DNA from: Magallana gigas
Taxonomy: Eukaryota
Direction: 5' to 3'
Assembly (NCBI RefSeq): GCF_963853765.1
Contig: NC_088858.1
Coordinates: 41,292,001 to 41,356,000, forward strand
DNA length: 64,000 bases
Both the position numbers and the translations under genes were made by a program. How positions within the stretch are numbered: position 1 is the first letter of the stretch; every line of letters begins with the position of its first letter. Of this stretch, positions 8,834 through 37,303 are shown piece after piece. Below the pieces are notes generated by a model. That model saw only the letters and a program-made list of their open reading frames with translations, was not told the DNA's origin and made no database searches.

Positions 8834-9049
8834 TTAATGCAATAGCTGATTGTCACTCTTGATTTTCACCTGACAATTTGTCCTTACTTCAACCAACCAA
8901 ACAATACAGTGCTAAAAATTGAAATATTTATTTAACATTTTACAAGAAAATACAAGAAAACAGCAAGTCTTGACTTAATAGTTATATGGTTTGATCCAAC
9001 AGTCTTTGGTGTTAGTGGTTATCACATAAATAGTTCATTGGATTGCTCC

Positions 9050-12000
9050 CAATTAAATGTCCTGTCAATGTTCCTCTTATAAATGGTCCTGATGATGTTT
9101 CTCCAGACAATGTCCTGCTTATAGTCCTCTAGAATATGTCCTATGATGACTATCAAGTTGATGTCCTGATTATGGTACTCCAGTAGATTGTCCAGTGAAT
9201 GATCCTCATCTAATGGTCCAGTTGTTTTTCCATAGGGTGGTCTAATTGTTGTTCCTCCTATAAGTGTCCTGTTGTTGATCCTTTAGTAGATGTCCAGTTG
9301 ATGGTCCTTTAGTAGATGTCCAGTTGATGGTCCTTTAGTAGATATTAAGTTAAAGATCCTCCATTCATTATTTCAGTTGTTGTTCCTCCAGTAGGCATCC
9401 TGTTGTTGATCCTCTGGTAGATGTCCAGTTGATGGTCTTTCAGTAGATATTATGTAGACGATTGCTTAATTTGATGTCCTGTTTCTCTTTTTCTAGTAGA
9501 TGGTCCCAATAATAATCCTCTAGTAGATTGCTCATTTAATGATTCTCCATTAAATTATTTCAGTTGTCTGTTCTCTAGTAGGTACCCAGTTTGTCTTCCA
9601 GTTGATGTCTAGTTGATGTTCCTGTAGTCTGTTGATGATTCCTCAGTTGATAGTCCTCCAGTAGATGGTCCAGTTGGCATCCTCAAAAAGGTGTCCTGTT
9701 GTTGGATTTCCAGAAGATATGATGATGATGATCCCATTAATGTCCAGATAAAATTATCCTCCAGTAGGTGTCCCATTTATTATCCTCCAGAAATTCCCCC
9801 TGCTGATGATCCATTCAAAAGATTTCCTGTTGATGGTCCTCCAGTAGATCCCTGCTGATGACACTTCAATAGTTGTCCTGCTGATCAAGTTGATGGTCCT
9901 CCAGTAGGTGCCCTGTTGTTGGTCTTTCAGTAGATATCCTGTTGATAGCTCTGAATTTAAAGTAAAGTTACTGCAGATGGTCCTCCAGTAGATAATTTAG
10001 TTGTTCATCCTCCAGTAGGTGTCTTGTTGTAGGTTTTCCAGTTGATGTTGAGTTGATAATCCTCCAATAAGGGACCTGTTGATGATTTTCAATTTATGTT
10101 CCAGTTGGCATTTCCGTTGATTGACAAGTTGATGATCTCCAGTAGATGTCCTGCTGATGATTATCCTTCAGATGGTTCAGATGGTTATCCTATATAGATG
10201 GTCTTTGAGTAAATAACTTAGTTGTTGATCTTCCAGTAGAGGCCCTGTTGTTGATCTTCAAGTCGGTGTCCTGTTGCAGGTCCTTTAGTTGAAGTAGAGT
10301 TGATAAATCTCCAGTTAATGTTCTGTTAATAATCCTCCAGTGGATGGTCCTGATGAGAAATCTAATTGAGCTTCAAGTTGATGGCCCTCTAGTAGAATGT
10401 CCAGCTGATGACCCTACAGCAGTTGGGTGGTCCAATTACCTAGCAGATGTCCTGTTGTTGATCCTCTGGTCAATGTTGATGGTGCAGTAGTAGATTGTCT
10501 AATGATGATTTTACAGCTGATGATCCTTAAGTCGGTGTCTGTAGTTTGTCTTCCAGTAGATGTCTAGTTTATGGCTAACCAGTATTAGTCCTGATGATGG
10601 TCCTCCATTAGATGGTTCGATTAAGATCCTTAATAATTAGTTAATGGATTACCAGTATATGCCCTGTTGATGGTTCTTCAAGATGATTCTCCAGTAGGTG
10701 GTCCTGCTGATGGTCCTTCAGTAGTTGTCCTGTTGTTGTACAACAGTAGATGTAAAGCAGATATTCAGTCAGTAGATGTCCTGTTGATGATCTTCCTGTA
10801 GGTGATTCTGATGATTATCCTCTTTAAGTGGTCCTCAAGTAAATAATTTAGTTTGTGATCGTCCAGTTAGTGTCCTGTTGGTCCTTTAGTTGATAAATCT
10901 CCATTTAATGTTGTGTGAATGATCCTCCAGTAGATGGTCCTGATGAACTACTAATTGTAATTCCAGTTAATGGCCCTATAATAGATTCTCCAGTTTATGA
11001 TCTTCCAGCAGTTGGGTGGTCCATTTGCCCAGTAGGTGTCCTGTTTTCTTTCCTCCAGTAGATCGTCCAATTTTGATCCTCCAGTACCTGCAGATCTGTA
11101 TGCCACTAGCCTAAAAGAAATCTGGATGGACGACCAGAGGGCTACAGCACCACACATAAAAAATGTTGATTTATTGTGTACCAAACAGTGTGCAGTTTCT
11201 TGTTTATTTCAGACTAGTGAGCTACAGATCCGCAGCTAGTTCAGTTGTTGATCATCCAGTAGGTGTCTTCTTTTAATGATCCCTCAGATGATAGTCATCC
11301 AAAAGATGCCCTATGAATAGATTTTCAATCAATGTCTTGTTGGTTAATTGCAAGTATTTATTCTATTGAATGTACTCTACGAAGAGTCCTGATTATGATC
11401 CTTTATATGATGTTCTGTTGATGGCCTTCCAGTTGATTTCCTGCTGAAGGTCCTCCAGTAGATATCTTTCTAATGGTCGTATAAAAAAGGTCCTTTAGTT
11501 TCTGTTGTTGGTACTTTGCTTGTGATCCTTCAAAAGACTGTTCAGTTGAGGAAACTTTGGTATATGTCCTATTATTGGTCTTCCAGTGGATGTGCAGTTG
11601 ATGGTCCACCAGTAGACATATTGTGATGATCTTGATGCATATTTTATTCAGTTGATGGTCCTAATGACGATTCTTTAATATATAGTCTGTAGTACATGGT
11701 CCAATCGTTGATTCTCCAATATATGTTTGTTTGATGATTCTCTAGTAGATGTCCTGTTGATTGTCCTCCAATAGATGTTCCGATGATAAACTGATGTCCT
11801 GCTGATGATCCTTCAAAAGATGGCATTCTAATTAGTCCTGATGATGATTCTTTAGTAGAGAGCCTTGTAAATGGTGCTCAAGTTAATGGACTAGTTATAG
11901 ATGTTTAATTAATAGTTCTCCAGAAGGTAACCTGTTGATGGTTCTTAAACAGATGGTCCAGAATCTTTATTATGGTTGGGCCTCTTGTAGATGGCCCAGT

Positions 12001-15000
12001 TGATGTTCCTCGAGTTGATGTCCTGTTGATGACCCTTAAGTTGATAGTCCTCCAGTAGGTGTCCTTTCATACCCCAGTAAATATCCAGTTGATGATCGTT
12101 CAGAAGATATCCTATTCATGTCATCCAATAGATGTACTGTTGATTATTCTCAGGTTGATGTCCTTTTGCGTATCCCTGATGATGATCCTACAGTCAATGG
12201 TCAAGCTGATAGTCCTCCTGTAAATGGTATTCTTAATTATCCACCAGAATATGCCCAATAAATATCCTGTTGATTGTCCTTCAGAAGATGTGCTGATGAA
12301 ATTTAAAACTAGAAGATGTCCAGCTGATGATCCTCTTGATGGCCTTTCAGTTGATTTCTTGCTGTAGGTCCTCCAGTATATGGTCCTTCCAGTAGGTATC
12401 CTGTAGCTGGTTCTCTTGTAGATTTTGATTTGATGATTCCTGAGATCATCAAATTTACAATTGGAGTAGATTGTCAGGTTGATGATCTTCCAAAAAGTGC
12501 CCTGTTGTTGGTCCTCTAGTAGATTGTCCATTTGATGATTTTCCAAAAGGTCACCTGCTTTTGTTCTTCTTGTAGTAGGTCCAGCTGATGATCTTCTAGT
12601 AAGTGTCCTGTAGTTGGTCCATTGGATGGTCAAGGCGATGATCTTTCAATGGGCGTTCTGTTGCTATTCCTCTGGAAGTAGTAGGTCCAGTTGATGATCC
12701 TCCAATAGGTGTCAAGTTGTTGATCCTCCGGTAAAAGGTCCCATTGATTTTCCAATAGTTTTTTGTGTTGTTGGTTCACCAGTAGATGGTTGAGTTGATG
12801 ATTTTCCAATAGGTGATAGGTTGTTGTTCCTCCGGTAAATGGTCTAGTTGATGACCTTCCAGTAAATGTCCTGTTGTTGGTCCTCAAGTAGATGGTTGAG
12901 TTGACGATCTTCCAAAAGTAATGTTATTGGTCATTCAGAAGATGTTCCAGTTGTTGATCTTCCAATTAGTGTTCTGTTCTTGGTCCTCAAGTAGCTGGTC
13001 CAGTTGATGATCTTCCAGTAAGTGTCCTGTTGTTGGTCCTCCAGTAGATGGTCAAGGCAGTGCTCTTCCAATAGATGTTCTGTTGTTGTTCCTTGGGAAG
13101 TAGGTGCAGTTGATTATCTTCCAATAGGTGTCAGGTAGTTGGTCCTCTAGTAGAGGGTCCAGTTGCTTATATTCTAATAGGAGCCCTCCGGAATATTGTT
13201 CAGTTCATGATCTTCATATAAGTGTCAGGTTGTTCAAATAGCTGGTCTACTTAATGATCTTTGAATTGGTGTCTTGTTGTTGAACTTTCAGTAAGTAGCC
13301 TGGTTGATTTATTCCTCAAATAGGTGGACCTCCAGTAAGTAGCTAGTCCAATTGATGATCTTCCAGTAAGTGTCCTGTTGTTGGTCCTCCAGTAGAAGGT
13401 CCATTTGATCTTCCAAAAGATGTCCTGTTGTTGGTCCTCCAGTAGTAGAAGGTCCAGTTCATGATCTTCCAATAGGTGTCCTGTTGCTGATCCTTCAATA
13501 GATGGTCATCCTGATGATCTTCTAATCTGCTGTTGTTCTTCTGGTATTAAGTCCAGTTGATGATCTTCCAGTAGGTGTTATGCTGTCTTCCGATAGGTGT
13601 TCTGTTGTAAGTCCTCCAGTAATTAGTTTAGATGATGATATTCCAATAGGTGTCCTGTTGTTGGTCCTCCAGTAGACAGTCCAGTTGATGTTCTTCCAAA
13701 AAAGTGTCCTGTTGTTGGCCCTTCAGTAGATGGTCTTCCTAATGATCTTCTAATCCGCTGTTGTTTTTCTGTTAGAAGATCCAGTTGATGATCTTCCAGT
13801 AGGTATTATTTTGTTGGTCATCTGATAAAGGTCCAGTTGATAATCTTCCCATATATGTCCAGAAGATCCAGTTGATGATCTTCCAGTAGGTGTTATTTTG
13901 TTGGTCATCTGATAGAAGGTCCAGTTGATAATCTTTCCATATATGTCCAGTTGTTGGTCCTCCAGTAGACAGTCCAGATGATGATCTTCCAAAAAAGTGT
14001 CCTGTTGTTGGCCCTCAAGTAGATGGTCCAGTGATGATCTTCCCATAAATGTCCTGGTGTTGGTCCTCCAGTAGATGGTCCAGTTGATAATCTTCCAATA
14101 AGAGTCCAGTTGTTGGTCCTGCAGTAGATGGTCGAGTTGATGATCTTCCAATAGGTGTTCTGTTGTTGGTCCTCCGGTAGATAGTCCAATGATGATCTTC
14201 CCATCAATGTCCTGTTGTTGGCCCTCAAGTAAATGGTCCAGTGATGATCTTCCCAAAGTAGATGGTCCAGTGATGATCTTCCCATCAATGTCCTGTTGTT
14301 GGTCCTCCAATAGATGGTCCAGTTGATAATTTTCCATAGATATCCTGTTGTTGGTCCTCCAGTAGATGGTCCAGTGATGATCTTCCCATAGATGTCCTGT
14401 TGTTGTTCCTCCAGTGGATGGTCCAGTGATGATCTTCCTATAAATGTCCTGTTGTTGGTCTTCCAGTGGATAGTCTAGTTGATGATCTTTCAATTGGAGT
14501 TCTGTTGTTGGTCCTACGGTAGATGGTCCAGTGATGATCTTCCCATAGATGTCCTGTTGTTGGCCCTCAAGTAGATGGTCCAGTGACGATCTTCCCATAG
14601 ATGTCCTGTTGTTGGTCCTCCAGTGGATGGTCCAGTTGATGATCTTCCAATAAGTGTCCAGTTGTTGGTCCTGCAGTAGATGGTCCAGTTGATGATCTTC
14701 CAATAGGTGTCCTGTTGTTGGTCCTCCAGAAGACAGTCCAGTTAATGATCTCCCAAAAAAGTGTTCTGTTGTTGGCCCTCAAGTAGACGGTCCAGTGATG
14801 ATCTTCCCATCAATGTCCTGTTGTTGGTCCTCCAGTAGATGGTTCAGTTGATGTTCTTCCAATAAGAGTCCAGTTGTTGGTCCTGCAGTAGATGATCTTC
14901 CCATAAATGTCCTGTTGTTGGTCCTCCGAGAGATGGTCCAGTTGATGATTTTCCAATAAGAGTCCAGTTGTTGGTCCTGCAGTAGATGGTCCAGTTGATG

Positions 15001-18000
15001 ATCTTCCAATAGGTGTTCTGTTGTTGGTCCTCCGGTAGATGGTCCAATGATGATCTTCCCATCAATGTCCTGTTGTTGGCCCTCAAGTAGATGGTCCAGT
15101 GATAATCTTCCCAACATAGATGGTCCAGTGATGATCTTCCCATCAATGTCCCGTTGTTGGTCCTCCAGTAGACGGTCCAGTTGATAATTTTTCCATAGAT
15201 GTCCTGTTGTCTGTCCTCCAGTAGATGGTCCAGTGATGATCTTCCCATAAATGTCCTGTTGTTGGTCCTCTGGGAGATGGTCCGGTTGATAATCTTTCCA
15301 ATCAATGTCCTGTTGTTGGTCCTGCAGTGGATGGTCCAGTGATGATCTTCCTATAAATGTCCTGTTGTTTGTCTTCCAGTGGATAGTCCAGTTGATGATC
15401 TTTCAAAAGGAGTTCTGTTGTTGGTCCTCCGGTAGATGGTCCAGTGATGATCTTCCCATAGATGTCCTGTTGTTGGTCCTCCAGTGGATGGTCCTGTTGA
15501 TGATCTTTCAATTGGAGTTCTGTTGTTGGTCCTACGGTAGATGGTCCAGTGATGATCTTCCCATAGATGTCCTGTTGTTGGTCCTCCAGTGGATGGTCCT
15601 GTTGATGATCTTCCAATTAGTGTCCAGTTGTTGGTCCTCCGGTAGATGGTCCAGTGATAATCTTCCAATAGGTGTCCTGTTGTTAGTCCTCAAGTAGACA
15701 GTCCAGTTGATGATCTTCCAAAAAAGTGTCCTGTTGTTGGCCCTCAAGTAGACGGTCCAGTGATGATCTTCCCATCAATGTCCTGTTGTTGGTCCTCCAG
15801 TAGATGGTTCAGTTGATGTTCTTCCAATAAGAGTCCAGTTGTTGGTCCTGCAGTAGATGATCTTCCCATAAATGTCCTGTTGTTGGTCCTCCGAGAGATG
15901 GTCCAGTTGATAATCTTTCCATAGATGTCCTGTTGTTGGTCCTCCAGTAGATGGTCCAGTGATGATCTTCCCATAAATGTCCTGTTGTTGGTCCTCTGGG
16001 AGATGGTCCAGTTGATAATCTTTCCATAGATGTCCTGTTGTTGGTCCTCCAGTGGATGGTCCAATGATGATCTTCCCATCAATGTCCTGTTGTTGGCCCT
16101 CAAGTAGACGGTCCAGTTGATAATTTTTCCATAGATGTCCTGTTGTTGGTCCTCCAGTAGATGGTCCAGTGATAATCTTCCCATAAATGTCCTGTTGTTG
16201 GTCCTCTGGGAGATGGTCCAGTTGATAATCTTTCCATAGATGTCCTGTTGTTGGTCCTCCAGTGGATGGTCCAGTGATGATCTTCCTATAAATGTCCTGT
16301 TGTTGGTCTTCCAGTGGATAGTGTAGTTGATGATCTTTCAATAGGAGTTCTGTTGTTGGTCCTCCGGTAGATGGTCCAGTGATGATCTTCCCATAGATGT
16401 CCTGTTGTTGGTCCTCCAGTGGATTTTCCTGTTGATGATCTTCCAATAAGTGTCCAGTTGTTTGTCCTGCAGTTGATTGTCCAGTTGATGATTTTCAAAT
16501 AGGTGTTCTGTTGTTGGTCCTCCAGTAGATGGTCCAATGATGATCATCCCATCAATGTCCTGTTGTTGGCCCTCAAGTAGACGGTCCAGTTGATAATTTT
16601 TCCATAGATGTCCTGTTGTTGGTCCTCCAGTAGATGGTCCAGTGATAATCTTCCCATAAATGTCCTGTTGTTGGCCCTCAAGTAGACGGTCCAGTTGATA
16701 ATTTTTCCATAGATGTCCTGTTGTTGGTCCTCCAGTAGATGGTCCAGTGATGATCTTCCCATAAATGTCCTGTTGTTGGTCCTCTGGGAGATGGTCCAGT
16801 TGATAATCTTTCCATAGATGTCCTGTTGTTGGTCCTCCAGTGGATGGTCCAATGATGATCTTCCCATCAATGTCCTGTTGTTGGCCCTCAAGTAGACGGT
16901 CCAGTTGATAATTTTTCCATAGATGTCCTGTTGTTGGTCCTCCAGTAGATGGTCCAGTGATGATCTTCCCATAAATGTCCTGTTGTTGGTCCTCTTGGAG
17001 ATGGTCCAGTTGATAATCTTTCCATAGATGTCCTGTTGTTGGTCCTCCAGTGGATGGTCCAGTGATGATCTTCCTATAAATGTCCTGTTGTTGGTCTTCC
17101 AGTGGATAGTCTAGTTGATGATCTTTCAATAGGAGTTCTGTTGTTGGTCCTCCAGTAGATGGTCCAGTGATGATCTTCCCATAGATGTCCTGTTGTTGGT
17201 CCTCCAGTGGATTTTCCTGTTGATGATCTTCCAATAAGTGTCCAGTTGTTTGTCCTGCAGTTGATTGTCCAGTTGATGATTTTCAAATAGGTGTTCTGTT
17301 GTTGGTCCTCCAGTAGATGGTCCAATGATGATCATCCCATCAATGTCCTGTTGTTGGCCCTCAAGAAGATGGTCCAGTGATGATCTTCCTATTAATGTCC
17401 TGTTGTTGGTCCTCCAGAAGATGGTCCAGTTGATAATTTTCCATAGATCTCCTTTTGTTAGTCCTCCAGAAGATGGTCCAGTGATGATCTTCCCATAGAT
17501 GTCCTGTTGTTGGTCCTCCAGTGGATGGTCCAGCTGATGATCTTCCAATAAGTGTCTAGTTTTTGGTCCTCCAGTGGATAGTCCAGTTGATGATCTTCCA
17601 ATAGGTGTTCTGTTGTTGGTCTTCAGTAGATGGTCCTGTGATGATTTTTCCATAAATGCCCTGTTGTTAATCCTCCAGTTGATAGTCCAGTTGATTTGTT
17701 TTATAGGTGTCCTGTTGTTGGTCCCCTAGGAGATAGTCCAGTTGATGATCTTCCAATAGGTGTCCTGTTATTGGTCCTCCAGAAGAGTCCAGTTGATGAT
17801 CTTCCAATAATTGTCCTGTTGTTGGTCCTGCAGTAAATGGTCCGGTTCAGGTGATTGTCTTCCAATAGGCGTTCTGTTGTTGGTTATCTAGTAGATGTTA
17901 AATTGCTTTTCTGTAAACTGTAAAATACTTTCCCTCATAAAAATAATGTAATTATCTTTGCATTTACTATTACTAAGTGTTTTCTCTCATATGATTTGTT

Positions 18001-21000
18001 GATAATTCTCTGTAATTATTGTACCTGAAAAGTTTTGCTTTATCTTCTTCCTATATTTGTCAGTAAATGGTTTGTTGATTTATTGCTAATGGATCGTTTG
18101 TTGATGGTACTCTAGTTGTTGATCTACCAGTAGTACTGTCCTGTTGGAAGTCAACCATTGCTGCTCTTTACATCAATGTCCTACAGAAGATGCCTTGTTC
18201 ATTGTCCACTAGTAGATCCCCAATGAAACAGTGATGTCATCTTTCACCAAAATTTCATCATGTTTACCCCTCAGGTTGATTTTCGCTACAATAGATTACC
18301 TCTCCTTTACTCCAAATCCAATCCATCATTTGTGCATTTTTTATTGTCTTTATGAAGATGCCTTGTTAATTGTCCACCAGTAGATCCTCTTATAATCAGT
18401 GACATTATCTTCCACCAAAATTGCATCATGTTTACTCCTCAAGTCGATGTTCTCTACAATAAAAATACCTCTCCATTCCCTTCAAAAATCCAACTCAAAT
18501 CCATCTAGTGCGTGTTTTATCATTCTGTCAAAGAGGCAACCAGTGTGTACTCTTGCAGGATATGTTTGCGACGTGGTAGACATTCATGATGGCACTTCTC
18601 CTGTCTTCTGCAAATAAAAGCAAAAAATACTAGTACTTACACCTACTTAACAAGCAATCTTGTTGCCAATGTTCCTATTCCTTAGGTGGCCTGATGATCT
18701 TTCTCCAGGACAAGTCCCGCTGATGATTCCCCAGTTGATGTCATGTTGATAAGCCCCTTGTAGCTGTTCTGCTGATGATCATCCAGTTGATGTCATATTG
18801 ATGAACCCTCAGTAGATGTCACATTGATGGTCCTCAAAGTCTGTCCTGTTGATAGTCCTCTGTAGATGTCAAGTTTTATAAAGATCCTCTAGTATCCTAT
18901 TCTGAGATCTGCTTCTTTCCCCCCAGTAGGTCCTGTTGTTTGTCCTCCAGTAGATGGTCCAGTTGATAATCTTCTAATAAGTGCCCAGTTGTTGGTCCTC
19001 CAGTAGATGGTCCAGTTGATGATCTTCCAATAAGTGTCCTGTTGTTGTTCCTCCAGTAGATGGTCCAGCTGATGATATAGGTGTACTTATGAAAGTCCTC
19101 AAATAGGTTGTCCAGTTGTTAATCTACCAATAATTGTCCTGTTGTTGGTCCTCCAGTAGATGGTCTAGTGATGAACTTTCCATGTAGATGTCCCGTTGTT
19201 GGTCCTCCTGTAGATGGTCCAGTGATGATCTTCACATGTAGAAGTCCTGTTGTTGTCCTGTTGTTGTTCCTCCAGTAGATGGTCGAGTGGATGATCTTCC
19301 AATGGGTGTTCTGATGTTGGTCTTCCAGTAGATGGTCCAGTTGATGATCTTTCAATAGGTGTTCTGTTGTTGGTTCTCTTGTAGATGTTATTTTGCTTTT
19401 CTGTAAAATGTAAAATTCTTTCCTTTATAAGAAGAATCTAATTGTCTTTACATTTACAATGTTTTCTTTCATATGATTTGCTGATCATTCTCTGTAATTA
19501 TTGTACCTTAAAATATTTGCTCAAAGGTTCTATCTTAATTAGTATGTTGTTGATTAACTGCTGATAAATATTCTGTTGAAGGTACTCTAGTCGTTGATCT
19601 ACCAGTTGTACTCTGTCCTGCTGGAAGTCAACCATAGTTGCCCCTTACATTGTCTTACTAAAGATGCCATGTTAATAGTCCACCAGTAGATCTCAAATGT
19701 AACAGTCATGTCTTCTTCCACCAAAATGTCCTCATGTTTACCTCTCAAGTCCATGTTCTCTACAATAAATTACCTCTCCTTTTGAATAAGAAACTCCAAA
19801 TCCAATCCATCTTCTATGTATTGTCTATTGTCCTACAGAAGATGCCTTATTCATTCTCCACCAGTAGATCCCTAATGAACCAGTGACGTCACCTTCCACC
19901 AAAATTGCATCATGTTTACTCCTCAAGTCGATGTTCTCTACAATAAAAATACCTCTCCCATTCCTTTCAAAACTCCAACTCAAGTCCATCTTGTCCATGT
20001 TTTATCATTCTGTCAAAGAGGCAACCAGTGTGTACTCTTGAAGGATAAGTTTGCGGTGTGGTAGACATTCATGATGGCACTCCTCCTGCCTTCTGCAAAT
20101 AAAAGCAAAAATACTAGTACCTGCCCCTGCTTACCAAGAAATCTTGTTGCCAAAGTTCCTTTTCCTTAGGTTGCCTGATGATCTTTCTCAAGAACAAGTC
20201 CCGCTGATGATTCCCCAGTTGATGTCATGTTGATGAGCCCCTTGTAGCTATTCTGCTGATGATCATCCAGTTGATGTCATATTGATGAACCCTCAGTAGA
20301 TGTCACATTGATGGTCCTCAAAGTCTGTCCTGTTGATAGTCCTCTGTAGATGTCAAGTTTTATAAAGATCCTCCAGTATCCTATTCTGAGATGCTCTGCT
20401 TATTTTCCCCCATTAGGTCCTGTTGTTTGTCCTCCAGAAGATGGTCCAGTTGATGATCTTCTAATAAGTGTCCTGTTGTTGGTCCTCCAGTAGATGGTCC
20501 AGTTGATGATCTTCCAATAATTGTCCTGTTGTTGTTCCTCTAGTAGATGGTCCAGCTGATGATCTTTGAATAGACGTCCTTATGAAAGTCCTCCAGTAGA
20601 TGGTCCAGTGCTGATCTTCCCATGTAGATGTCCTGTTGTTGGTCCTCCAGTAGATGGTCCAGTGATGATCTTCCCATGCAGATGTCCTGTTCTTGGTCCT
20701 CCAGTAGATTGTCCGGTTGATGATCTTCTAATAACTGTCTTGTTGTTGGTCCTCCAGTAGATGGTCCAGTGATGATCTTCCTATGTAGAAGTCCTGTTGT
20801 TGTTCTTCCAGTAGATGGTCGAGTGGATGATCTTCCTATGGGTGTTCTGTTGTAGGTCTTCAAGTAGATTGTCCAGTTGATGATCTTTCAATAGGTGTTC
20901 TGTCGTTGGTTCTCTTATAGATGTAATTTTGCTTTTCTGTAAAATATAAAATTCTTTCCTTTACATTGTCCTTACATTTACTATGTTTTCTTTCATATGA

Positions 21001-22960
21001 TTTCATATGATTTGCTGATCATTCTCTGTAATTATTGTACCTTAAAATATTTGCTCAAAGGTTCTATCTTAATTAGTGTGCTGTTAATTAACTGCTTATT
21101 AATCTTCTGTTGATGGTACTCTAGTTGTTGATCTACCAGTTGTACCATGTCCTGCTGGAAGTCAACCATAGTTGCCCCTTACATTGTCTTACTAAAGATG
21201 CCATGTTAATTGTCCACCAGTTGATCCCAAATGTAACAGTCATGTCTTCTTCCACCAAAATGTCATCATGTTTACCCCTCAAGTCGATGTTCTCTACAAT
21301 AAATTACCTCTCCTTTTGAATAAGAAACTCCAACTCCAGTCCATCTTCTATGTATTGTCTATTGTCCTACAGAAAATTCCTTGTTCATTGTCCACTAGTA
21401 GATCCCTAATGAACCAGTGATGTCATCTTCCACCAAAATTGCATCATGTTTACTCCTCAAGTCGATATTCTCTACAATAAAAATACCCCTCCCATTCCTT
21501 TCAAAACTCCAACTCAAATCCATCTTGTCCATGTTTTATCATTCTGTCAGAGAGGCAACCAGTGTGTACTCTTGCAGGATATGTTTGCGACGTGGGAGAC
21601 ATTCATGATGGCACTCCTCCTGCCTTCTGCAAATAAAAGCAAAAATACTAATACCTGCCCCTCCTTACCAAGAAATCTTCCCATAGATGCCCTGTTGTTT
21701 GTCCTCCAGTAGATGGTCAATAGGTTTACTTATAAATGTCCTCAAAAAAATTGTCCAGTTGATGATCTTTAAGTAGGTGTTCTGTTGTTGGTCCTCCAGT
21801 CGATGGTCCAGTGATGATCTTCCAATAGGTGTTCTGTTGGTCCTCCAGTAGATGGTCAAGTTGATGATCTTCCAATAAGTGTCCTGATGTTGTTCCTTCA
21901 GTAGATGATCTTCACATAGATGTCCTATTGTTGTCCAGTAGATGGTCCAGTTGACAATCTTTTAATAGATGTCCTGTTTTTGGTCCTCCAGAAAGAAGTC
22001 CAGTTGATGATCTTTTAATAGGTCCTGTTGATGGTCCTCCAGATGATGGTCCAGTTGATCTTCCAAAAGGTGTCCTGTTGTTGGTCATTCAAAAAATAGT
22101 ACAGTTGGTGATCTTTCAAAAGGTGTCCTCATGTTGGTCAATCAGTAGATGGTCTAGTTGATGATCTTCCAATAGGTATCAAGTTGTTGGTCTTTAAGTA
22201 AATGTTATTTTGCTTTTCTGTCAACTGTAAAATACTTTCCTTTATAAAAAGAATGTAATTGTATTTACATTTACAATTGCTGTGTGGGTTTTTTCATATG
22301 ATTTGCTGATAATTCCTTGTTATTAATGTACCTGCAAATATTTGCTTATGTGTTGTTGATTTCTAATGGATCTTTTGTTGATGTTACTCTAGATGTTCAT
22401 CTACCAGTAGTACTGTGTCCTGTTTGAAGTCAACCAGAGTTGCCCCTTATATTGTCCTACTTAATTGTCCTCCAGTAGATCCGCAGTGCACCAGTGACGT
22501 CATCTTCCCCAAACACTGCATCATGTTTACTCTTAAAGATGATGATCTCTACAATAAATTACCTCTCCTTTTCCCTCCAAATCAATTCCATCTTTCCTTA
22601 GGTGGCCTGATGATCTTTCTTCAGGAAATGTCCCACTGATGATGCTCTAGTTGATGTCATGTTGATGAGCCCCTTGTAGCTGTCCTGCTGGTGATCATCC
22701 ATTTGATGACAGTTTGGTGATCCCTCAAGTAGACGTCCCTTTGATAGTCCTCAGTAGATATCCTGTTGTTGATCTTCCATTAAATGATGTGTTGATGGTT
22801 CTCCAGTATATGTCCTATTGATGATCCTCCAGTTGAAATCATGTAAATAATCCACTGGACTTTACTGATGGGGGCTCTTTTGCAACTGTTTTTCATTTAA
22901 AATTAACTTGCAGATGGTTTGTATCCAGTTGATGGTCCTCCAGTAATCAACTGATGATAT
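9050..22960. repeat. ~14-kb minisatellite array: 26/27-bp monomer, 52/53-bp dimer in the homogenised core (about 13500-17880)
   Basis: Core consensus GTAGATGGTCCAGT(T)GATGATCTTCCC-ATAGATGTCCTGTTGTTGGTCCTCCA. Monomers are degenerate at 9050-13400, and a higher-order duplication has a 788-bp offset (16261 versus 17049). Confidence 0.95.
11087..11236. mobile_element. TA-targeting MITE inserted into the satellite
   Basis: Imperfect TIRs CCTGCAGATCTGTA / TACAGATCCGCAGC flanked by TA on both sides. Same family as 31799-31942 and 43743-44520. Confidence 0.75.
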
Positions 22961-23520
22961 TTTAGTAATGTTTTATTGATGGTCATCGTAATTGGGGTTT
23001 TTTTTTTTGCATTCCTTTAAACTATCAAATACTCTTCTTTATAAAAGTACCGTAATGTGTTTCTGAAAAAAAAATTGATCTTTTGATAATTTTATTCAGT
23101 TATGTACCTTAAAGTTTACTGAAATTTTCTTTCAATGTTTGATCGTCGGTGAATGCAACGTTCAATGCTAATGGATCATTTGTTGATGGTACTCTTGTTT
23201 ATTATCTACCTGAAGTAGGGTGTCCTGTCAAGTGTCAATGAGAGTTGTCTTTTATTTTCCTTTTTTCCTAAGACATTGTCCAAAAGTTGATCCCCAAGGA
23301 ACCAGTCCCTTCATCTGTCCTTATATCTATTTGTATCATTCTTATAGTCCTTCACTAGATGTTTTCTACAAAAAATTACCTTTCCCTTTCCCTTATTATT
23401 TCCCAATGCCTGTTTTATTATCCCCTCAGAGCCGCAGTCAGTATTTCACTCCTTCATGGATGCTTTTGACTTGATTGACATTCATGGCAGCATTGTGCTT
23501 TCACATTCTGCAAAAAAATG
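17890..23520 (-). pseudogene. Five tandem exon-intron modules of a decayed repetitive (Ser/Thr/Gly/Pro-rich, mucin-like) gene
   Basis: Minus-strand GT-AG segments at 17911-18024, 19401-19506, 20937-21040, 22218-22331 and 23015-23107 lie at the same position in each 0.8-1.5-kb module. Flanking sequence translates to STTGRSTTRVPST- and TSTREPTT-like peptides but carries stops and frameshifts. Confidence 0.5.
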
Positions 23521-26500
23521 CTATCAAACTACCAAGTACCTGCTGGCCTCCCCAGTAGAAATTCTGTTGCAGATGTTCCTTCCAAGTTCACATGGATTGT
23601 TCTTTGGTTGATTTACCCCAGATTCATTTAACGCGTACTTGGTGAATTCAGCTTGTGATTGCTCAATCGGTGTTTTCATATTGATAACCTCCCATTTAAA
23701 CCTGTTGATAACAAAAACGTAAAGTACCTGAACAGGACCCACGAGTAGACAATTCGTTTTCTTCTTCACCCTCCTTTGGTATATTCATGCGTTCTTTGAT
23801 GGTCTACTGTTGCTTCTCAATAAGTTCCACCAACTGATAAATGGGATTATTCTGATCCTCCAGTAGTCCATTGAATGGCATGTTGGTTTTTTAAAGAACT
23901 CATTTGGGTGTTATAATAATGATAATTAATGTACATGTATATAATACTGTTTACACCTAGTAGTAGAATTTCAGGGAATATCACTATTTCTTTAAGCTCA
24001 TAAGTGTCCCAACACTCTCTCTGAGATAAAATTTCATAAACACAAACCATGACAGAAATCTTTCTTAAATAGATAAAACTTTTTTTCATTTTTAAAGCTG
24101 AACATAAACAGTTAATCTAATTTTGGAATTTACCCGTTTATCAGGAAAACGGGTCCTCAGACCTATAATTTTTACAGCAGCTTTTACATCAACCATGTTA
24201 CACAACACCTTGTTTTTGAACCTCATTTTCTAAGCTGCATCATAAAACATCTCGAACACTTCGCTGCTTCTTGGGTCAAATGCTACAAAATATTTAATTT
24301 TTTGCCATGGGTCGTTACCTTTTACAAAATGGCCCCATGTCTTTTTTCAATCAGTGCATTACATTATATAGTTGATCATTGACTTCGTCTCAATAATTTA
24401 TCTAGGCATCACCTGTAATTTCTAAAACTAGGACATTTGATTACAGCCTGTTTACCCATTCGCAACAGTCTCCTATTATGTCGATGATCAGCTTTCCATT
24501 CTTTCAAGCAGACTGGACCAATGATGCAGCATAGAAGGTTCGTGTTAACTCTTCAACAGCTTCCCTCAGACATAGACATATACTCAACAACCCATTGCTC
24601 TCTTCAAATTGATCTTGCACTTCTAGACAATGAAATGGGTTGACAAAGAAAACCCCAGGCATGTCTTACCTACATACTGTATTATTTCATTGACTGTTAC
24701 AATACTCCTTAACCTCTTGTACTTGTGAAAATGTTAAGACTATGAACTTGTAAATGGTCAGAATTCTCTTATTACAACAGCTGGATCTATCTACAAAGTA
24801 TATTACCTTGCACTTCGGACAAAAAGCTTTCCCAAACCTCTTCATTCATTGGACTAATCACAAAAGCACTCTAACTTTCTGCACATATCAGGGCTATAAA
24901 AAATTAACTTCACCCCAACTATCATACACAACAGCTAATTTCACTTTATAGTTATTTAAATTTCATTTTGTTAGAAGACAGAATATTATTTTCACATTTA
25001 AAATCAAATAAATGGGATTTTTATTTTACCAAAGGCTACCTTTCAAGAATAATCAGGGCTTGGATCACTATTGTGTGCATGGACATAGCACGTTGACTCC
25101 TCACAACATATATAATTAACAAAAACATTACACTACGAAGACTGTTGACTTCTGTTGAATCTGGAGATGCTGCAACTCTGGTATGCATGGATATGCATGT
25201 TGACTCCCTCACAAGCGGTTGTGTTGACGCGTCAAGGTGCACGGACATGCATTGATGAATCCAAGGAGACAAGCAATAAACTGCTTTTTAATCAGCACAG
25301 AAGAGTACCTATTCTTTAGATTCTCACCGAATATGCATGGATATGCATGCCGATTCCCCTCTGGTACCAGTGTCTTCATCTATAAAAGAATACCTCCGCT
25401 ACCCTCTAATCATTTGTGTGCATGGAAATGCATCGTAGACTTCAATCCGGCGTCTATGCTACAAATTCAATTCACTCCAAACACATGCATTCAACTTTAA
25501 AAATGGTCTAGTGAAATATGTTTTTTAAAGATATTAATGTTTTGTATCTTAGAGACGAAGTGTTTTAAACTGACTTGCCTTTCAGAGTATTTCCTTTTAA
25601 AAATGACAAATATTTTAGATTTTCAGTTAAATGAATGTTTGCAAATTTTTAACATAAAAGCCAAGTTTCACAATTGAAAATATACTTTCATTTGAGAGTT
25701 TTACAGCTTTATGAATATTTGCAAATTTTAAACGCCTTGTTTCATAATATATATCTTTGAAGACGTTTTGTTGATTTCTGACTAAAGGGCTTCGTAGCCG
25801 TGTTCATGGATTATGTTTATCTAGTATTTTGTGCATAGGTGCTAATCAACGTTTCCATATTGGTCTACATCCGAAATTCAAAACAATTATTTAAAATCAG
25901 TTTCAAGACATTACATTTTCTGAGGATACTATATTACTGCTAGGTCTACCGTATGTCTTTTACACCTTCAGTACCTTATCTGGTGACTTCTCTACAGTGT
26001 CCATGTATTCAACGTGTTGTTTAACTTTCATACAACCAGCTTGATATGCTTCAGTATAAACGACCAGGTGCAACATCAATGTTTATAGAGTATAGTGCCA
26101 TTTCACAATTTTTGGACGCTGCTTTAAGGACCATTTCACCAAGATCACTTTAATGGAAATGAATGCAAAATATGCTGAAGCTGTTGAGGCAAGGAGAAGT
26201 CAGTAGCATGGAGCGTGTAACAGGCTCAATACATCACTGGGTCACTCTCAAGAATAGGTCACCTTAAACTTGTCATGTCACCTTTGCATTGTCTTAAGGT
26301 TCAACTTTTATTACAGCACTTCTTAATCTCTGAAAAAGACCTTGATTACTGGCAATGTTGACCCACCCCCATTAAAATGTTTCTTTGTCAATTTTTTTAA
26401 ACAATTCATAAAAAACTTTGTATAGTAGGCATTTCTTTCAAATATTATCCCCTCTTGAAAAATACCTGTTACATGTCTGTCCCTGATTAAATGATCAAGC

Positions 26501-31065: not shown

Positions 31066-34000
31066 CTGAAAAGAAAATTAAAGAATGAATTAGAACATGT
31101 ACCGGTACTTAGTTTTTTTCCCTGATTTGTTATTTTAAAATGTTTCTAACTATATAGCTAGATTCCTAATAATTGGAGATTTGTATTTTGTGTAAGAAGT
31201 CACTAAAGAAAAAATAAAGAAGTAGTAACTTTATATATTTACATTTTCAACTGTCTTTGTGTGTGGTAACATTACAAATCAATTTTGAGCCTATAACCCA
31301 ATAATTTCAAAAAAGATGAGCGACACAATAAGGTAGTGTCTTTAGCATAACTGAAAAACGGTATTGGCTGCGCTGTGCAGTAATAAAACATAACATGCCG
31401 CATGAAAAAATAGTGGTTTTGAAATGTTGTTTTAAAGTGTAAAAATTGGAAATAATATATATATAGGACAAGTAATAAGGAATCATTCTTTGAATATTAT
31501 GCGGGGATAATTTCGGTCGGAGCGTTGTCAAATCTATCATAAAGCCCTTTAGGCTTTATTGGATTTGACCACGCCCCAACCAAATTATCACCTCATAACA
31601 CTCAAAGAATGATTCCTTATATTCCTTAAATATTCTTATACCTGTTTATTATACTTTAAAATTGTTATGTTAACACAACATTTGTAAAAATACTTTGATG
31701 AAAAGCCAATGCCCCAGATAAAATAAGTAACAAGTAAGAATATATACTTGCAAAAATAAAGCAACTATATAATTAACACTGTCTGAATTATACATGTAAC
31801 TGCAGGTCTGTAGATTCCTGGTCTGAAAAGAATTCAGAAGGACAACCTGGAAGCCACATTTCCGTATGTGTAAAAAAGTTGCAATTTACGGCGCACAAAA
31901 ACTTGCACTAGTTCTCAGACCGGGGACCTACAGACCTGCAGCTATATCTGAATATGCATTTGTATTTTTAAAAAAATCGTAAAACAAAACAAACCTAAAC
32001 ATATACCGGTATATATATAAGGAATAAGGAATCATTCTTTGAGTATTATGGGGTGATAATTTTGGTCGTGGCGTGATCAAATCCAATAAAGCCCAAAGGG
32101 ATTTATGATAGATTTGATCACGCCCCGACCGAAATTATCACCTCATAATATTCAAAGCATGATTCCTTATTACTTATATTTATATAATTTTAAGCCACCG
32201 TACGATTAAATATTTAAATATAAATAAGCAAACCCCGGTGCCTCAATTTGGCGTCATTTGTATTATGGGTTATATAGTACAAAATCGATACGCAGTGTTA
32301 TCACAGGCAAAGGCACTGGAAAATGTAAATATATATATAATTTGGACTTACTGAGATGTGTTTATCTGCTGGCTCAAAACCAAAAACTTTGGCAAAAAAA
32401 TAGAACTCCCCATCCAGAGCCTTTTGTATGTTTTCAGCTTTTCTGAATCCATGTTGTTCTCCTATTGATTAAACAATCAAGAACAGCTTATGTTCATTTT
32501 ATTAACTAATCATATAGGAATATAGCTAAAATATATTTACTTCAAAATTTTTTTAAAGAAATTCTAATATGTACATTTTTCCTGTATAATGATTATGAAA
32601 GTGACATATATTCTACTTTTTCAATTCTAGGCATGAAAGGTAAACCACTAATTTTAACACCATATGATACTTTTGTGCATATGCTGCATTGCAGTTATTT
32701 CAGTGGCCCCAGAAATGGTTATCATCTTATAAATATGGTATCTACCTAGCAGCGTTCATTACTGACCTTTGAACATGACCAATACTGTTGGTAGGCCTTT
32801 GGCCATAACAGCTTCGTACATCATCTCAGCCTGGTTAGGAAGAACAATCTGAAAATAAAGGCGTACATTCAATCAGTTGCCAGGCCTCCTGAAGGAAAAA
32901 ATCCAACACTGAAACATAAAATAGTGAATGTCAAACCTTGTCTTCATCCCCTTGGAAGAAAGCCATTGCACAATTAAGTTGATCAACATAGTTTATTGGA
33001 GAGCGTTCCTTGTAAATTTTGACGGTTTCTGCAGAGTATGGTGCAATAAGATTGTCAATGTATCGACTCTCAAACTTGTGTGTATCTCTGACAAGAGCTT
33101 CTAAATCCCCTATTCCATAATGGCTAGCACCTGTTTAAAATTTAAAACTATAAAAGCCATTTTTGAAATCAAGAATTATGCATTGAGAATCGTTTAAAAA
33201 ATCTAAGCTTCAAAGAAATTTTACAAATAAATTTTTTTTCATTAAAGTTCAGCACTTTTATTATTTTATACTGTTAAAATCCCATGCGAAACATAATTAT
33301 CTAAGACAAAGTGAAAATAAAAGTGCTAATGTTTAATATGCTTAATACATCATTGATTCTAATCAGCCTTTTAATCTACCTGGTATTACATAGACAGGAA
33401 TTTATTATATTCTCCCCCCCTCAGTGTACTCTAACCTGCTTTAAATACGGTCCTGAAGGCTAGACAGGCTAACGTAGTGTATCCCCCCGCAGATCCCCCA
33501 TCAATACACAGACAATTCTTGTCTACACGACCCTCTTCCGCTAGAGCCTGAGCCCCACTACTGCAATCATCCACATCATAGATTCCCCACCTAGATGGAA
33601 GATTGACATACATGTACATGTATATCGCACATTTCAAATTGCAAAGAAAAAATTTAATTTGATATTTTTAAAAATACCATTTTAATACATGTACAATGTA
33701 CAATTGTGGTAACTCTTGGTAACTGGGTAACATTTTCTGTTTAATTTAATTTTGAATTAGTTAATTAACTTAATTTTTCATTAAAATGGTCATTAAGACC
33801 ATTGGATATCTGGATTACAGCTAAAAATTTACTTTGTTTTTAGTTTGTTCCTGTATGCAGTTCCAAAACCAAAACTTCCTCTGTAGTTAACATCCAAAAC
33901 TGCAAATCCTCGACTTGTGAAGTATTGAATACCCAGAGCTATTGTGTTGGAGCTGTAGCCTGCAAATTAGATGTGAATCAAACATGTATATTTTAAAAAA

Positions 34001-37000: not shown

Positions 37001-37303
37001 GGGCCTCATGGACATCATAACCATGCATTCAGTTTTTTCCTCACATGTGTTGAATTAGAGAAGAAGATTTTTGAAAATTTGGCTTTTTTTGCATATTTGG
37101 CCCCACCCGTGGCACCCCAGGGGTGGTAGAGCCATAAATTTCACAATTTAGATTCTTCTTACCATAGAGATGCTTCACACCAAAAATGGTAACGATTGGC
37201 CTAGTAGTTTTCAAGAAGAAGTTAAAAATGTAAAATTGTTAACGCACGACGCACGACGCACAACGCACGACGCACAACGCACGACGACGGACGAAGACCA
37301 ATT

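What the first reader, a model, noticed from the sequence alone, without database searches (positions are those of the whole stretch)
8927..23520. Satellite array apparently grown inside a gene: five tandem modules each keep a GT-AG intron at the same position
On the minus strand each 0.8-1.5-kb module has a 93-114-nt AT-rich segment starting (C/A)AG|GTACA(A/T) and ending TTTTACAG-like (17911-18024, 19401-19506, 20937-21040, 22218-22331, 23015-23107). The interiors differ by indels but all five keep both ends. Each is followed by satellite-type sequence and preceded by a two-copy ~178-nt unique block with protein-like translation (IVENIDLRGKHD...YWWT). An AATAAA lies on the same strand just past the far end of the array (8927-8932). 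Inference: an exon-duplicated, mucin-like gene whose last repeat exon expanded into a multi-kb satellite, surviving as a pseudogene or spliced long non-coding RNA. The frames I checked in these exons contain stops.
Basis: partly seen in the sequence, partly recalled or inferred. Interest (0 to 1): 0.75.

Follow-up and report, generated by a model that had tools for sequence, protein, structure and literature searches.

The report
Spliced oyster RNA gene built from minisatellite

Summary
The repeat structure is real. A 26/27-nt unit, with 53-, 105- and 210-nt higher orders, fills window 9009-22855 in one orientation and occurs nowhere else in the 564-Mb genome.

PolyA RNA-seq reads cover all of 17700-23600 from one strand only. 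They show canonical minus-strand GT..AG junctions at four of the five predicted introns:
- 19401-19506 and 20937-21040, exactly as predicted.
- 17918-18024 and 22225-22331, with the acceptor 7 nt upstream of the prediction.

The fifth prediction (23015-23107) is not used. The real intron there is 23063-23209, with an alternative acceptor at 22549.

Coding is not supported:
- The confirmed exons carry 10-26 stops in every frame.
- The long ORFs in the young array arise because the unit has no stop in any frame of that strand.
- Differences between copies show no codon periodicity.
- Pfam, a word search and an exhaustive HMMER search found only unnamed ORFs of the same repeat type.

Best reading: a lineage-restricted, spliced, polyadenylated lncRNA gene that grew by unit amplification and by tandem duplication of exon-intron modules. 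The mucin-like ancestry is unsupported. An S9 peptidase gene ends about 8.5 kb upstream on the same strand, so read-through from it remains a rival.

The parts
23210..23842 (-). Upstream exon. The 3' end at 23210 is fixed by the splice junctions. The 5' limit of about 23842 is only inferred.
   Evidence: joints 23062>23210 and 22548>23210. This bin has the highest polyA depth (34 and 90). A 633-nt RNA contig (X2 record 7) covers 23210-23600 and runs about 242 nt past the end of the laid stretch.
23063..23209 (-). Intron a, 147 nt, GT..AG.
   Evidence: 3 + 16 raw polyA reads and one X2 contig. Ends printed.
22549..23209 (-). Alternative 661-nt intron. It uses the same donor, and its acceptor is the 'TTATTGTAG' at the start of the unique block.
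   Evidence: 29 reads from 22 starts, in X23 only. Ends are GT..AG.
22332..23062 (-). Exon E1 (module 1), 731 nt
   Evidence: Covered in all four runs. It has 10-18 stops per frame and its longest ATG ORF is 38 aa.
22225..22331 (-). Intron b, 107 nt, GT..AG.
   Evidence: 1 + 8 reads. An unspliced contig exists at about one tenth of the exon depth.
21041..22224 (-). Exon E2 (module 2), 1184 nt
   Evidence: 15-26 stops per frame, longest ATG ORF 58 aa.
20937..21040 (-).
   Evidence: table 7: loose ends of X6 and X2 contigs at 20938 and 21041 spell the sequence of the other exon. The joint may be among the 13 joints not listed.
19507..20936 (-). Exon E3 (module 3), 1430 nt
   Evidence: 19-24 stops per frame.
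19401..19506 (-). Intron d, 106 nt, GT..AG, exactly as predicted
   Evidence: 4 + 16 reads.
18025..19400 (-). Exon E4 (module 4), 1376 nt
   Evidence: 19-23 stops per frame.
17918..18024 (-). Intron e, 107 nt, GT..AG.
   Evidence: 8 + 4 reads, plus spliced contigs in X6 (depth 3799) and X2 (depth 562).
14257..17917 (-). Start of the last known exon, which is the young homogenised array (105/210-nt higher-order repeat, about 90% identical to the consensus). Transcription is shown only for 17700-17917.
   Evidence: One search shows a 98% identical 630-nt duplicate at an offset of 788 nt. One search shows reads and a spliced contig reaching 17806.
9009..14256 (-). Older, decayed part of the same array. 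Identity to the consensus is 82% falling to 71%, with 10-20 stops per kb in each frame. Transcription was not tested.
8927..8932 (-). AATAAA just past the array. It is a candidate polyA signal only.
   Evidence: The hexamer is common, and no read evidence was obtained.
23015..23107 (-). It is homologous to the other four but not spliced as such. Its 5' part lies inside intron a and its 3' part is exonic.

Best explanation
This is a spliced, polyadenylated long non-coding RNA gene on the minus strand, restricted to the oyster lineage. It is shown for window 17700-23842 and probably runs on into the array.

Nearly its whole body is made of one private 26/27-nt unit, about 400 copies over 9009-22855. 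The inferred growth has three layers:
1. Amplification of a 26-nt unit.
2. Formation of a 27+26 dimer (53 nt) and its 105/210-nt higher orders. These are still being duplicated in the terminal exon.
3. Tandem duplication of 1.3-1.5-kb segments, each holding array, a 'unique' block and a ~105-nt intron. This gave a row of exon-intron modules whose introns are all still removed.

The long ORFs of the young array are a by-product of a unit that has no stop codon in any frame of the transcribed strand. They are not evidence of coding.

If the RNA has a function, I infer that it acts as RNA. The most likely form is a long, unstructured, A-rich multivalent repeat platform for RNA-binding factors, as in other repeat-bearing lncRNAs. 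That step is inference and was not shown.
For: Transcription, strand and splicing are shown.
- PolyA raw reads (X22 625 reads, X23 1282 reads, from about 1% of each run) cover all 30 bins of 17700-23600.
- First mates lie on + in essentially every case.
- Five junctions are CT..AC on +, that is GT..AG on the minus strand.
- The same junction 17917/18025 appears in RNA contigs from two further studies.
- Contigs that retain introns have about one tenth of the exon contig depth (385-440 against 2951-5562 in X6). The signal is therefore processed RNA, not contaminating DNA.

The repeat is private to this locus. Own-genome searches with a module and with the array hit only window 9054-23228.

Evidence that it is non-coding:
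- Exons E1-E4 have 10-26 stops in each frame, and the longest ATG ORF is 58 aa.
- Stops are depleted in all three minus-strand frames only where the array is young.
- Mismatches between copies 105 nt apart split 20/33/28, 24/31/20 and 15/13/20 by codon position. pN/pS is 0.4-1.1 in every frame, and the open frame is not the lowest.
- Pfam gives only sub-threshold, repeat-inflated scores.
- The word search over 5.8 billion proteins finds only an ORF of this same locus.
- Exhaustive HMMER over 1.84 billion representatives finds only unnamed Logan/ENA ORFs of the same repeat type, plus a chance 35-aa-period match.
- A related 26-nt array on a metagenome contig has 32-38 stops in each frame of the corresponding strand.

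Growth history:
- Identity to the consensus rises from 71% to 82% to 90% between 9 kb and 17.9 kb.
- Modules are 75-83% identical to one another over 1.1-1.5 kb.
- The array holds a 98% identical 630-nt duplicate.
- Module-sized non-canonical joints point to copy-number alleles.
Against: The 5' and 3' ends are not mapped.
- The S9 peptidase gene on the same strand ends about 8.5 kb upstream. A link to it is not excluded.
- Transcription of the 8.7-kb array below 17700 was not tested.

The young array does hold ORFs of 223-317 aa, and its 105/210-nt period is a multiple of three. Translation is therefore not formally excluded.

There is no evidence of function.
- No sub-motif of the unit is conserved above background in the old copies.
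- The array RNA folds no better than shuffles, with z = +0.39.
- No Rfam family matches.

Expression levels cannot be compared across runs from contig depths.
Confidence: 0.7

Rival explanations
1. Read-through or an alternative long 3' UTR of the upstream S9 (prolyl-oligopeptidase-family) peptidase gene. The repeat exons would then be downstream non-coding exons of that mRNA, not a separate gene.
For: The peptidase gene is on the same strand. Its exons include the GGSAGG serine exon at 33434-33600 and the EQHGF histidine exon at 32304-32468. No other coding sequence was recognised between that gene and the repeat exons. The 5' end of the repeat transcript is not mapped.
Against: There is a gap of about 8.5 kb containing dispersed-repeat insertions. 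A minus-strand AATAAA lies about 650 nt after the peptidase stop. PolyA depth is highest at the 5'-most bin laid, and an RNA unitig stops near 23842. Five or more introns downstream of a stop codon would normally expose an mRNA to nonsense-mediated decay (established knowledge).
Confidence: 0.13
2. A protein-coding gene, either fast-evolving or newly born. The stop-free array would be translated into a repetitive 35-aa-period polypeptide, and the reference frame breaks would be tolerated or allelic.
For: The young array has ORFs of 223-317 aa, and its higher-order period of 105/210 nt is divisible by three. The RNA is polyadenylated.
Against: More than 5 kb of exon sequence full of stops and short ORFs precedes the array in the RNA. 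All three frames are about equally open, and no frame shows purifying selection. The older half of the array is closed in every frame. No annotated protein relative exists. A related array elsewhere is closed in all frames.
Confidence: 0.08
3. A single-strand precursor of small RNAs (piRNA-type cluster) rather than an lncRNA that acts at full length.
For: Transcription is long, strictly one-stranded, spliced and polyadenylated. This resembles uni-strand piRNA precursors (established knowledge).
Against: The content is a private minisatellite, not transposon fragments, and has no other genomic targets. No small-RNA data were examined.
Confidence: 0.07
4. A silent satellite or segmental duplication. 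The GT..AG ends would be chance survivals, and the RNA signal would be genomic DNA in the libraries.
For: GT/AG are no better conserved than neighbouring bases among the modules.
Against: Junction-spanning reads occur in polyA libraries and in contigs from several studies. Coverage is 100% strand-specific. Introns are depleted about ten-fold relative to exons.
Confidence: 0.01

Closest known systems
Local-repeat lncRNAs such as FIRRE (RRD repeats), Xist (A-F repeats) and NORAD (repeated units). This comparison is from my own knowledge.
   Same: It is a Pol II-type, spliced, polyadenylated non-coding transcript. Its exons carry tandem copies of a repeat private to the locus. The gene has grown by internal duplication, and exon-intron modules are repeated as in FIRRE.
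   Different: There is no sequence relation to them. Here the repeat makes up nearly the whole gene, about 400 short 26/27-nt units with a multi-kb homogenised terminal array. No binding factor, localisation or phenotype is known. The organism is a bivalve, where no such RNA has been characterised in the papers I could search.
Oyster satellite DNAs (the CgiSat01-52 satellitome and Helentron-borne Cg170-type arrays), PMC8268682 and PMC7492417
   Same: Tandem repeats with higher-order structure. One catalogued satellite (CgiSat33) also has a 105-bp monomer.
   Different: Those satellites are dispersed over many chromosomes, often carried by transposons, and make up at least 0.01% of the genome. 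This array is a single 14-kb locus, about 0.0025% of the genome. CgiSat33 is 46.7% AT and sits on 8-9 chromosomes. This array is 54-59% AT and sits at one site. I did not compare the sequences themselves.
Mucin-like or PTS-repeat genes with a large repeat exon
   Same: A large terminal repeat exon, variation in repeat number, and a short Gly/Pro/Ser/Thr stretch in one reading register.
   Different: There is no continuous ORF and no recognisable N-terminal coding exon. Ser+Thr+Pro are only about 23% of the 35-aa unit. The unit length is not a multiple of three. There is no codon signature and no protein homologue.

Membership tests
Spliced polyadenylated lncRNA | Transcribed from one defined strand | tested here: met
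   first mates lie on + in essentially all of 625 and 1282 reads. The splice-site orientation gives the minus strand independently.
Spliced polyadenylated lncRNA | Canonical introns removed from the RNA | tested here: met
   five GT..AG junctions listed as joints, four constitutive and one alternative. A further constitutive intron (20937-21040) is seen only as contig loose ends. Intron-retaining contigs have about 10% of the exon depth.
Spliced polyadenylated lncRNA | Polyadenylated | tested here: inconclusive
   The reads come from libraries labelled PolyA. No poly(A) site or tail was seen, because the 3' end lies outside the stretch laid.
Spliced polyadenylated lncRNA | No long or conserved ORF, and no protein homology | tested here: met
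   The spliced exons were examined one by one. A joined model was not built or searched.
Spliced polyadenylated lncRNA | Own promoter and transcription start (an independent gene) | not testable with these tools
   The reads tools were exhausted. An upstream same-strand peptidase gene ends about 8.5 kb away.
Satellite DNA of the oyster satellitome | Many arrays or high genomic abundance (at least 0.01% of the genome) | tested here: not met
   all matches lie inside this window. 14 kb of 564 Mb is about 0.0025%. The threshold is from PMC8268682.
Transposon-borne (Helentron/MITE) tandem repeat | Dispersed copies with conserved element flanks | tested here: not met
   the module, the array and the 2.4-kb upstream flank are each unique in the genome. 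Only 7319-7952, outside the array, is a dispersed repeat.
Mucin-like / PTS-repeat protein gene | Continuous in-frame repeat ORF rich in Pro/Thr/Ser, with coding exons upstream | tested here: not met
   the frame changes every few hundred nt, the older half of the array is closed in every frame, and the upstream exons have 10-26 stops per frame.
Mucin-like / PTS-repeat protein gene | Purifying selection on one reading frame | tested here: not met
   no 3-nt periodicity of differences. pN/pS is similar in all frames.

The most novel reading that the evidence does not exclude
The RNA is a functional, multivalent repeat RNA whose 26-nt unit is older than this species. Related 26-nt arrays turn up in unidentified ENA and metagenome contigs. 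The stop-free, 3n-periodic young array might additionally be translated, which would make the locus a minisatellite caught turning into a gene product.
Probability: 0.12. Interest if true: 0.7.

Novelty: new member of a known kind. Interest (0 to 1): 0.42.

Why it matters
It is a clean, read-supported example of how a gene can be built almost completely from a private minisatellite. It also shows that tandem duplication can multiply whole exon-intron modules while every copy of the intron keeps working.

In the two modules where the first AG of the acceptor pair is mutated, the next AG downstream is used. This makes a small natural experiment on 3' splice-site choice.

For oyster genomics, it marks a strongly stranded, spliced transcript that protein-based annotation would miss or mislabel because of its long accidental ORFs. 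If the RNA proves functional, it would be one of the first repeat-platform lncRNAs in a mollusc.

Tried and rejected
- Pfam hits to the array ORFs (Microp_apicomplexa_9, DUF5751 and others) have no single significant stretch. They are sums over repeats and were rejected.
- P0006, an intermediate-filament protein, matched only because it also has a 35-aa period, at 18-20% identity. Rejected as chance.
- CgiSat33, a 105-bp oyster satellite, was rejected on base composition and chromosomal spread. The sequences were not compared.
- I looked for a conserved sub-motif, such as the recurring GGAC, in the old array copies. Conservation is roughly flat.
- RNA folding of three 105-nt units gave z = +0.39. 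Rfam gave nothing.
- A paralogous S9 peptidase locus on another chromosome (L030) gave no help in finding this window's exons. Short homologues from the word search did.
- L032 from the metagenome scan is a chance three-copy 27-mer.
The DNA and sample of origin of the related Logan/ENA ORFs could therefore not be fetched, and cluster look-up gave no names or accessions.
Full report
**What is in the sequence.**

Tandem Repeats Finder reports one repeat family from about 9.2 to 22.8 kb, with periods of 26/27, 52/53, 105 and 210 nt. An nhmmer scan with the 53-nt consensus tiles 9009-22855 without a break in orientation. Every hit is on the minus strand.

Identity to the consensus rises along the array:
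- 71% at 9.0-12.4 kb.
- 82% at 12.5-14.2 kb.
- 90% at 14.25-17.9 kb.

The young part contains a 630-nt stretch that is 98% identical to a copy 788 nt away. The 3' part of the array is therefore old and decaying. The part next to the modules is still being duplicated.

Upstream of 17.9 kb the array is interrupted four times by 'unique' sequence. This gives modules of 0.8-1.5 kb that are 75-83% identical to each other over 1.1-1.5 kb. The ~178-nt block is doubled in three modules and single in the two upstream ones.

Searches of the whole 564-Mb genome hit only this locus, both with a module and with 630 nt of array. The 2.4 kb upstream of it is also unique. So this is a private minisatellite. 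It is not one of the dispersed oyster satellites, which are catalogued from 0.01% of the genome upward (PMC8268682). This array is about 0.0025%.

**Is it transcribed and spliced?**

Eight runs on record as RNA, from three studies, hold 60-69% of the 31-mers of 17700-23600. Unlabelled runs of the same organism label hold 69-73%. The run labels call the organism an oyster.

I laid two polyA raw-read runs and the contigs of two further RNA runs on 17700-23600.
- All 30 bins are covered.
- First mates lie on the + strand in essentially every read. With the usual stranded chemistry this means RNA from the minus strand.
- The junctions agree independently, because they read CT..AC on +, which is GT..AG on the minus strand.

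Introns seen:
- 17918-18024: 8 + 4 reads and spliced contigs in both contig runs.
- 19401-19506: 4 + 16 reads.
- 22225-22331: 1 + 8 reads.
- 23063-23209: 3 + 16 reads and a contig.
- 22549-23209: an alternative intron, 29 reads in one run.
- 20937-21040: seen only as contig loose ends that spell the opposite exon.

Contigs that retain an intron have depths of 385-440, against 2951-5562 for exon contigs in the same run. The signal is therefore processed RNA, not DNA.

Two are exact, and two have the acceptor 7 nt upstream. Where the first AG of the TTTTACAG-TTTACAG pair exists, in modules 5 and 2, it is used. Where it has mutated, in modules 3 and 4, the next AG is used.

The fifth predicted intron (23015-23107) is homologous to the others but is not used.

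Several well-supported non-canonical joints of module size look like copy-number alleles rather than splicing. Examples are 18974>20418 and 18970>20625. The joint 19162>22329, with 28 reads in one run only, remains unexplained.

**Is it coding?**

The exons bounded by confirmed introns are 731-1430 nt long. They carry 10-26 stops in each frame, and the longest ATG ORF is 58 aa.

The long ORFs of 223-317 aa all lie in the young array. There, stops are rare in all three minus-strand frames, at 1-7 per kb. They are common in the older array, at 10-20 per kb. The consensus unit simply contains no stop in any frame of that strand. I estimate that this has a chance of a few percent for a T-poor 53-mer.

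Because the units are 26 and 27 nt long, an ORF walks through all three registers of the same DNA unit. The '35-aa repeat' is the 27-nt unit read in two registers plus the 26-nt unit read in two registers.

Differences between copies 105 nt apart show no three-base periodicity: 20/33/28, 24/31/20 and 15/13/20. pN/pS is 0.4-1.1 in every frame. In the largest block, the frame with seven stops has a lower ratio than the open one.

Homology searches:
- Pfam gives only repeat-inflated sub-threshold scores.
- The word search finds one unnamed ORF, and it maps back to 12599-13237 of this window at 96% identity.
- The exhaustive HMMER search finds 15 proteins. Among those I examined, the real relatives are unnamed ORFs from Logan and ENA assemblies, and two of them show the same three-register pattern with a 26-aa period. 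The two that I searched against this genome (P0003 and P0004) match only this locus, at about 40% identity.
- One large hit is an intermediate-filament protein that merely shares a 35-aa period.

A pattern scan of metagenome contigs recovered a 2.6-kb contig made entirely of a related 26-nt unit. It is 64% identical to this array and has 32-38 stops in each frame of the corresponding strand.

Nothing points to a present or past protein. The mucin-like reading fails on composition, frame continuity and selection.

**What it most likely is and how it arose.**

It is a spliced, polyadenylated non-coding RNA gene whose body is a private minisatellite. The inferred order of events is as follows:
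1. A 26-nt unit amplified. This unit is still visible in each module and in the related metagenome array.
2. A 27+26 dimer and then its 105/210-nt higher orders took over.
3. Segments carrying array, unique block and intron were duplicated in tandem several times.
4. The terminal array kept expanding.

The RNA of the array is A-rich, folds no better than shuffled sequence (z = +0.39), and matches no Rfam family. No part of the unit is conserved above background in the old copies.

A role as a multivalent single-stranded platform is therefore a guess by analogy, not a finding. A neutral, merely tolerated transcript is also possible.

**Limits.**

I therefore could not test transcription of the array below 17700, the AATAAA at 8927-8932, or the 5' end. 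That hexamer occurs 169 times in the window. An RNA unitig suggests that the first known exon reaches about 23842.

While checking the upstream region I found a same-strand S9 peptidase gene. Its exons lie at about 33838-33954, 33434-33600 (GGSAGG serine), 32934-33134, about 32762-32850, and 32304-32468 (EQHGF histidine). Its coding sequence ends about 8.5 kb upstream of the repeat transcript. Read-through or an alternative 3' extension of that gene is the main rival, and I give it about 13%.

**Verdict.**

- Observation: largely right.
- Interpretation: right that this is a spliced gene, probably non-coding. Unsupported on mucin-like ancestry and on the term 'satellite'.
- Novelty: a new member of a known kind, namely repeat-built lncRNAs.
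- Interest: moderate. It illustrates module duplication with working introns, and it is a candidate repeat-platform RNA in a mollusc.

Noticed in passing
window 32304-33954, minus strand: Exons of an S9 (prolyl-oligopeptidase-family, 'dipeptidyl aminopeptidase/acylaminoacyl peptidase'-like) gene. They include the catalytic-serine exon (GGSAGG) and a last exon with EQHGF. The closest solved relatives are bacterial-type enzymes (7c72, 3azo). The N-terminal exons were not mapped.
   Followed up: partly
window 19162>22329, 18970>20625, 18974>20418, 21293>21380: Well-supported non-canonical joints in RNA reads and contigs. Most are about one module long and are probably copy-number alleles from unequal crossing-over. 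The 3166-nt joint (28 reads, one run only) starts 3 nt inside intron b and has no matching sequence in the reference. The 86-nt joint lies between the two block copies and has GA..AG ends.
   Followed up: partly
L031 (metagenome contig OBLZ010050611.1, 2575 nt); proteins P0003, P0004, P0005, P0007, P0011 (ENA): An unidentified organism carries a related array of a 26-nt unit (about 64% identical to this array). ORFs called on such contigs are the only protein 'relatives'. Their source organism could not be determined.
   Followed up: partly
window 16000-16630 versus 16788-17417: A 630-nt stretch of the array is 98% identical to a copy 788 nt away. This points to a very recent internal duplication.
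   Followed up: no
window 7319-7952: A dispersed repeat with at least 197 matches on all chromosomes. It lies next to short 21-22-nt tandem arrays at 6745-6994 and 7141-7265, and looks like a MITE or Helitron-type element.
   Followed up: no
window 35946-37037 and 40277-40740: Short arrays with 168-nt and 166-nt units (6.5 and 2.8 copies). This is the size class of the common oyster Cg170-type satellites.
   Followed up: no
window 31310-31555, 31931-32134, 41526-41801 (minus strand): Three copies of a short element that share the translated motif '[14 protein letters not shown]'. Two of them lie just downstream of the S9 peptidase stop, between that gene and the repeat RNA, and the third lies upstream of the mapped S9 exons. 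Probably an interspersed repeat.
   Followed up: no
window 573-733: A run of 161 N (gap or masked). It was left untouched.
   Followed up: no
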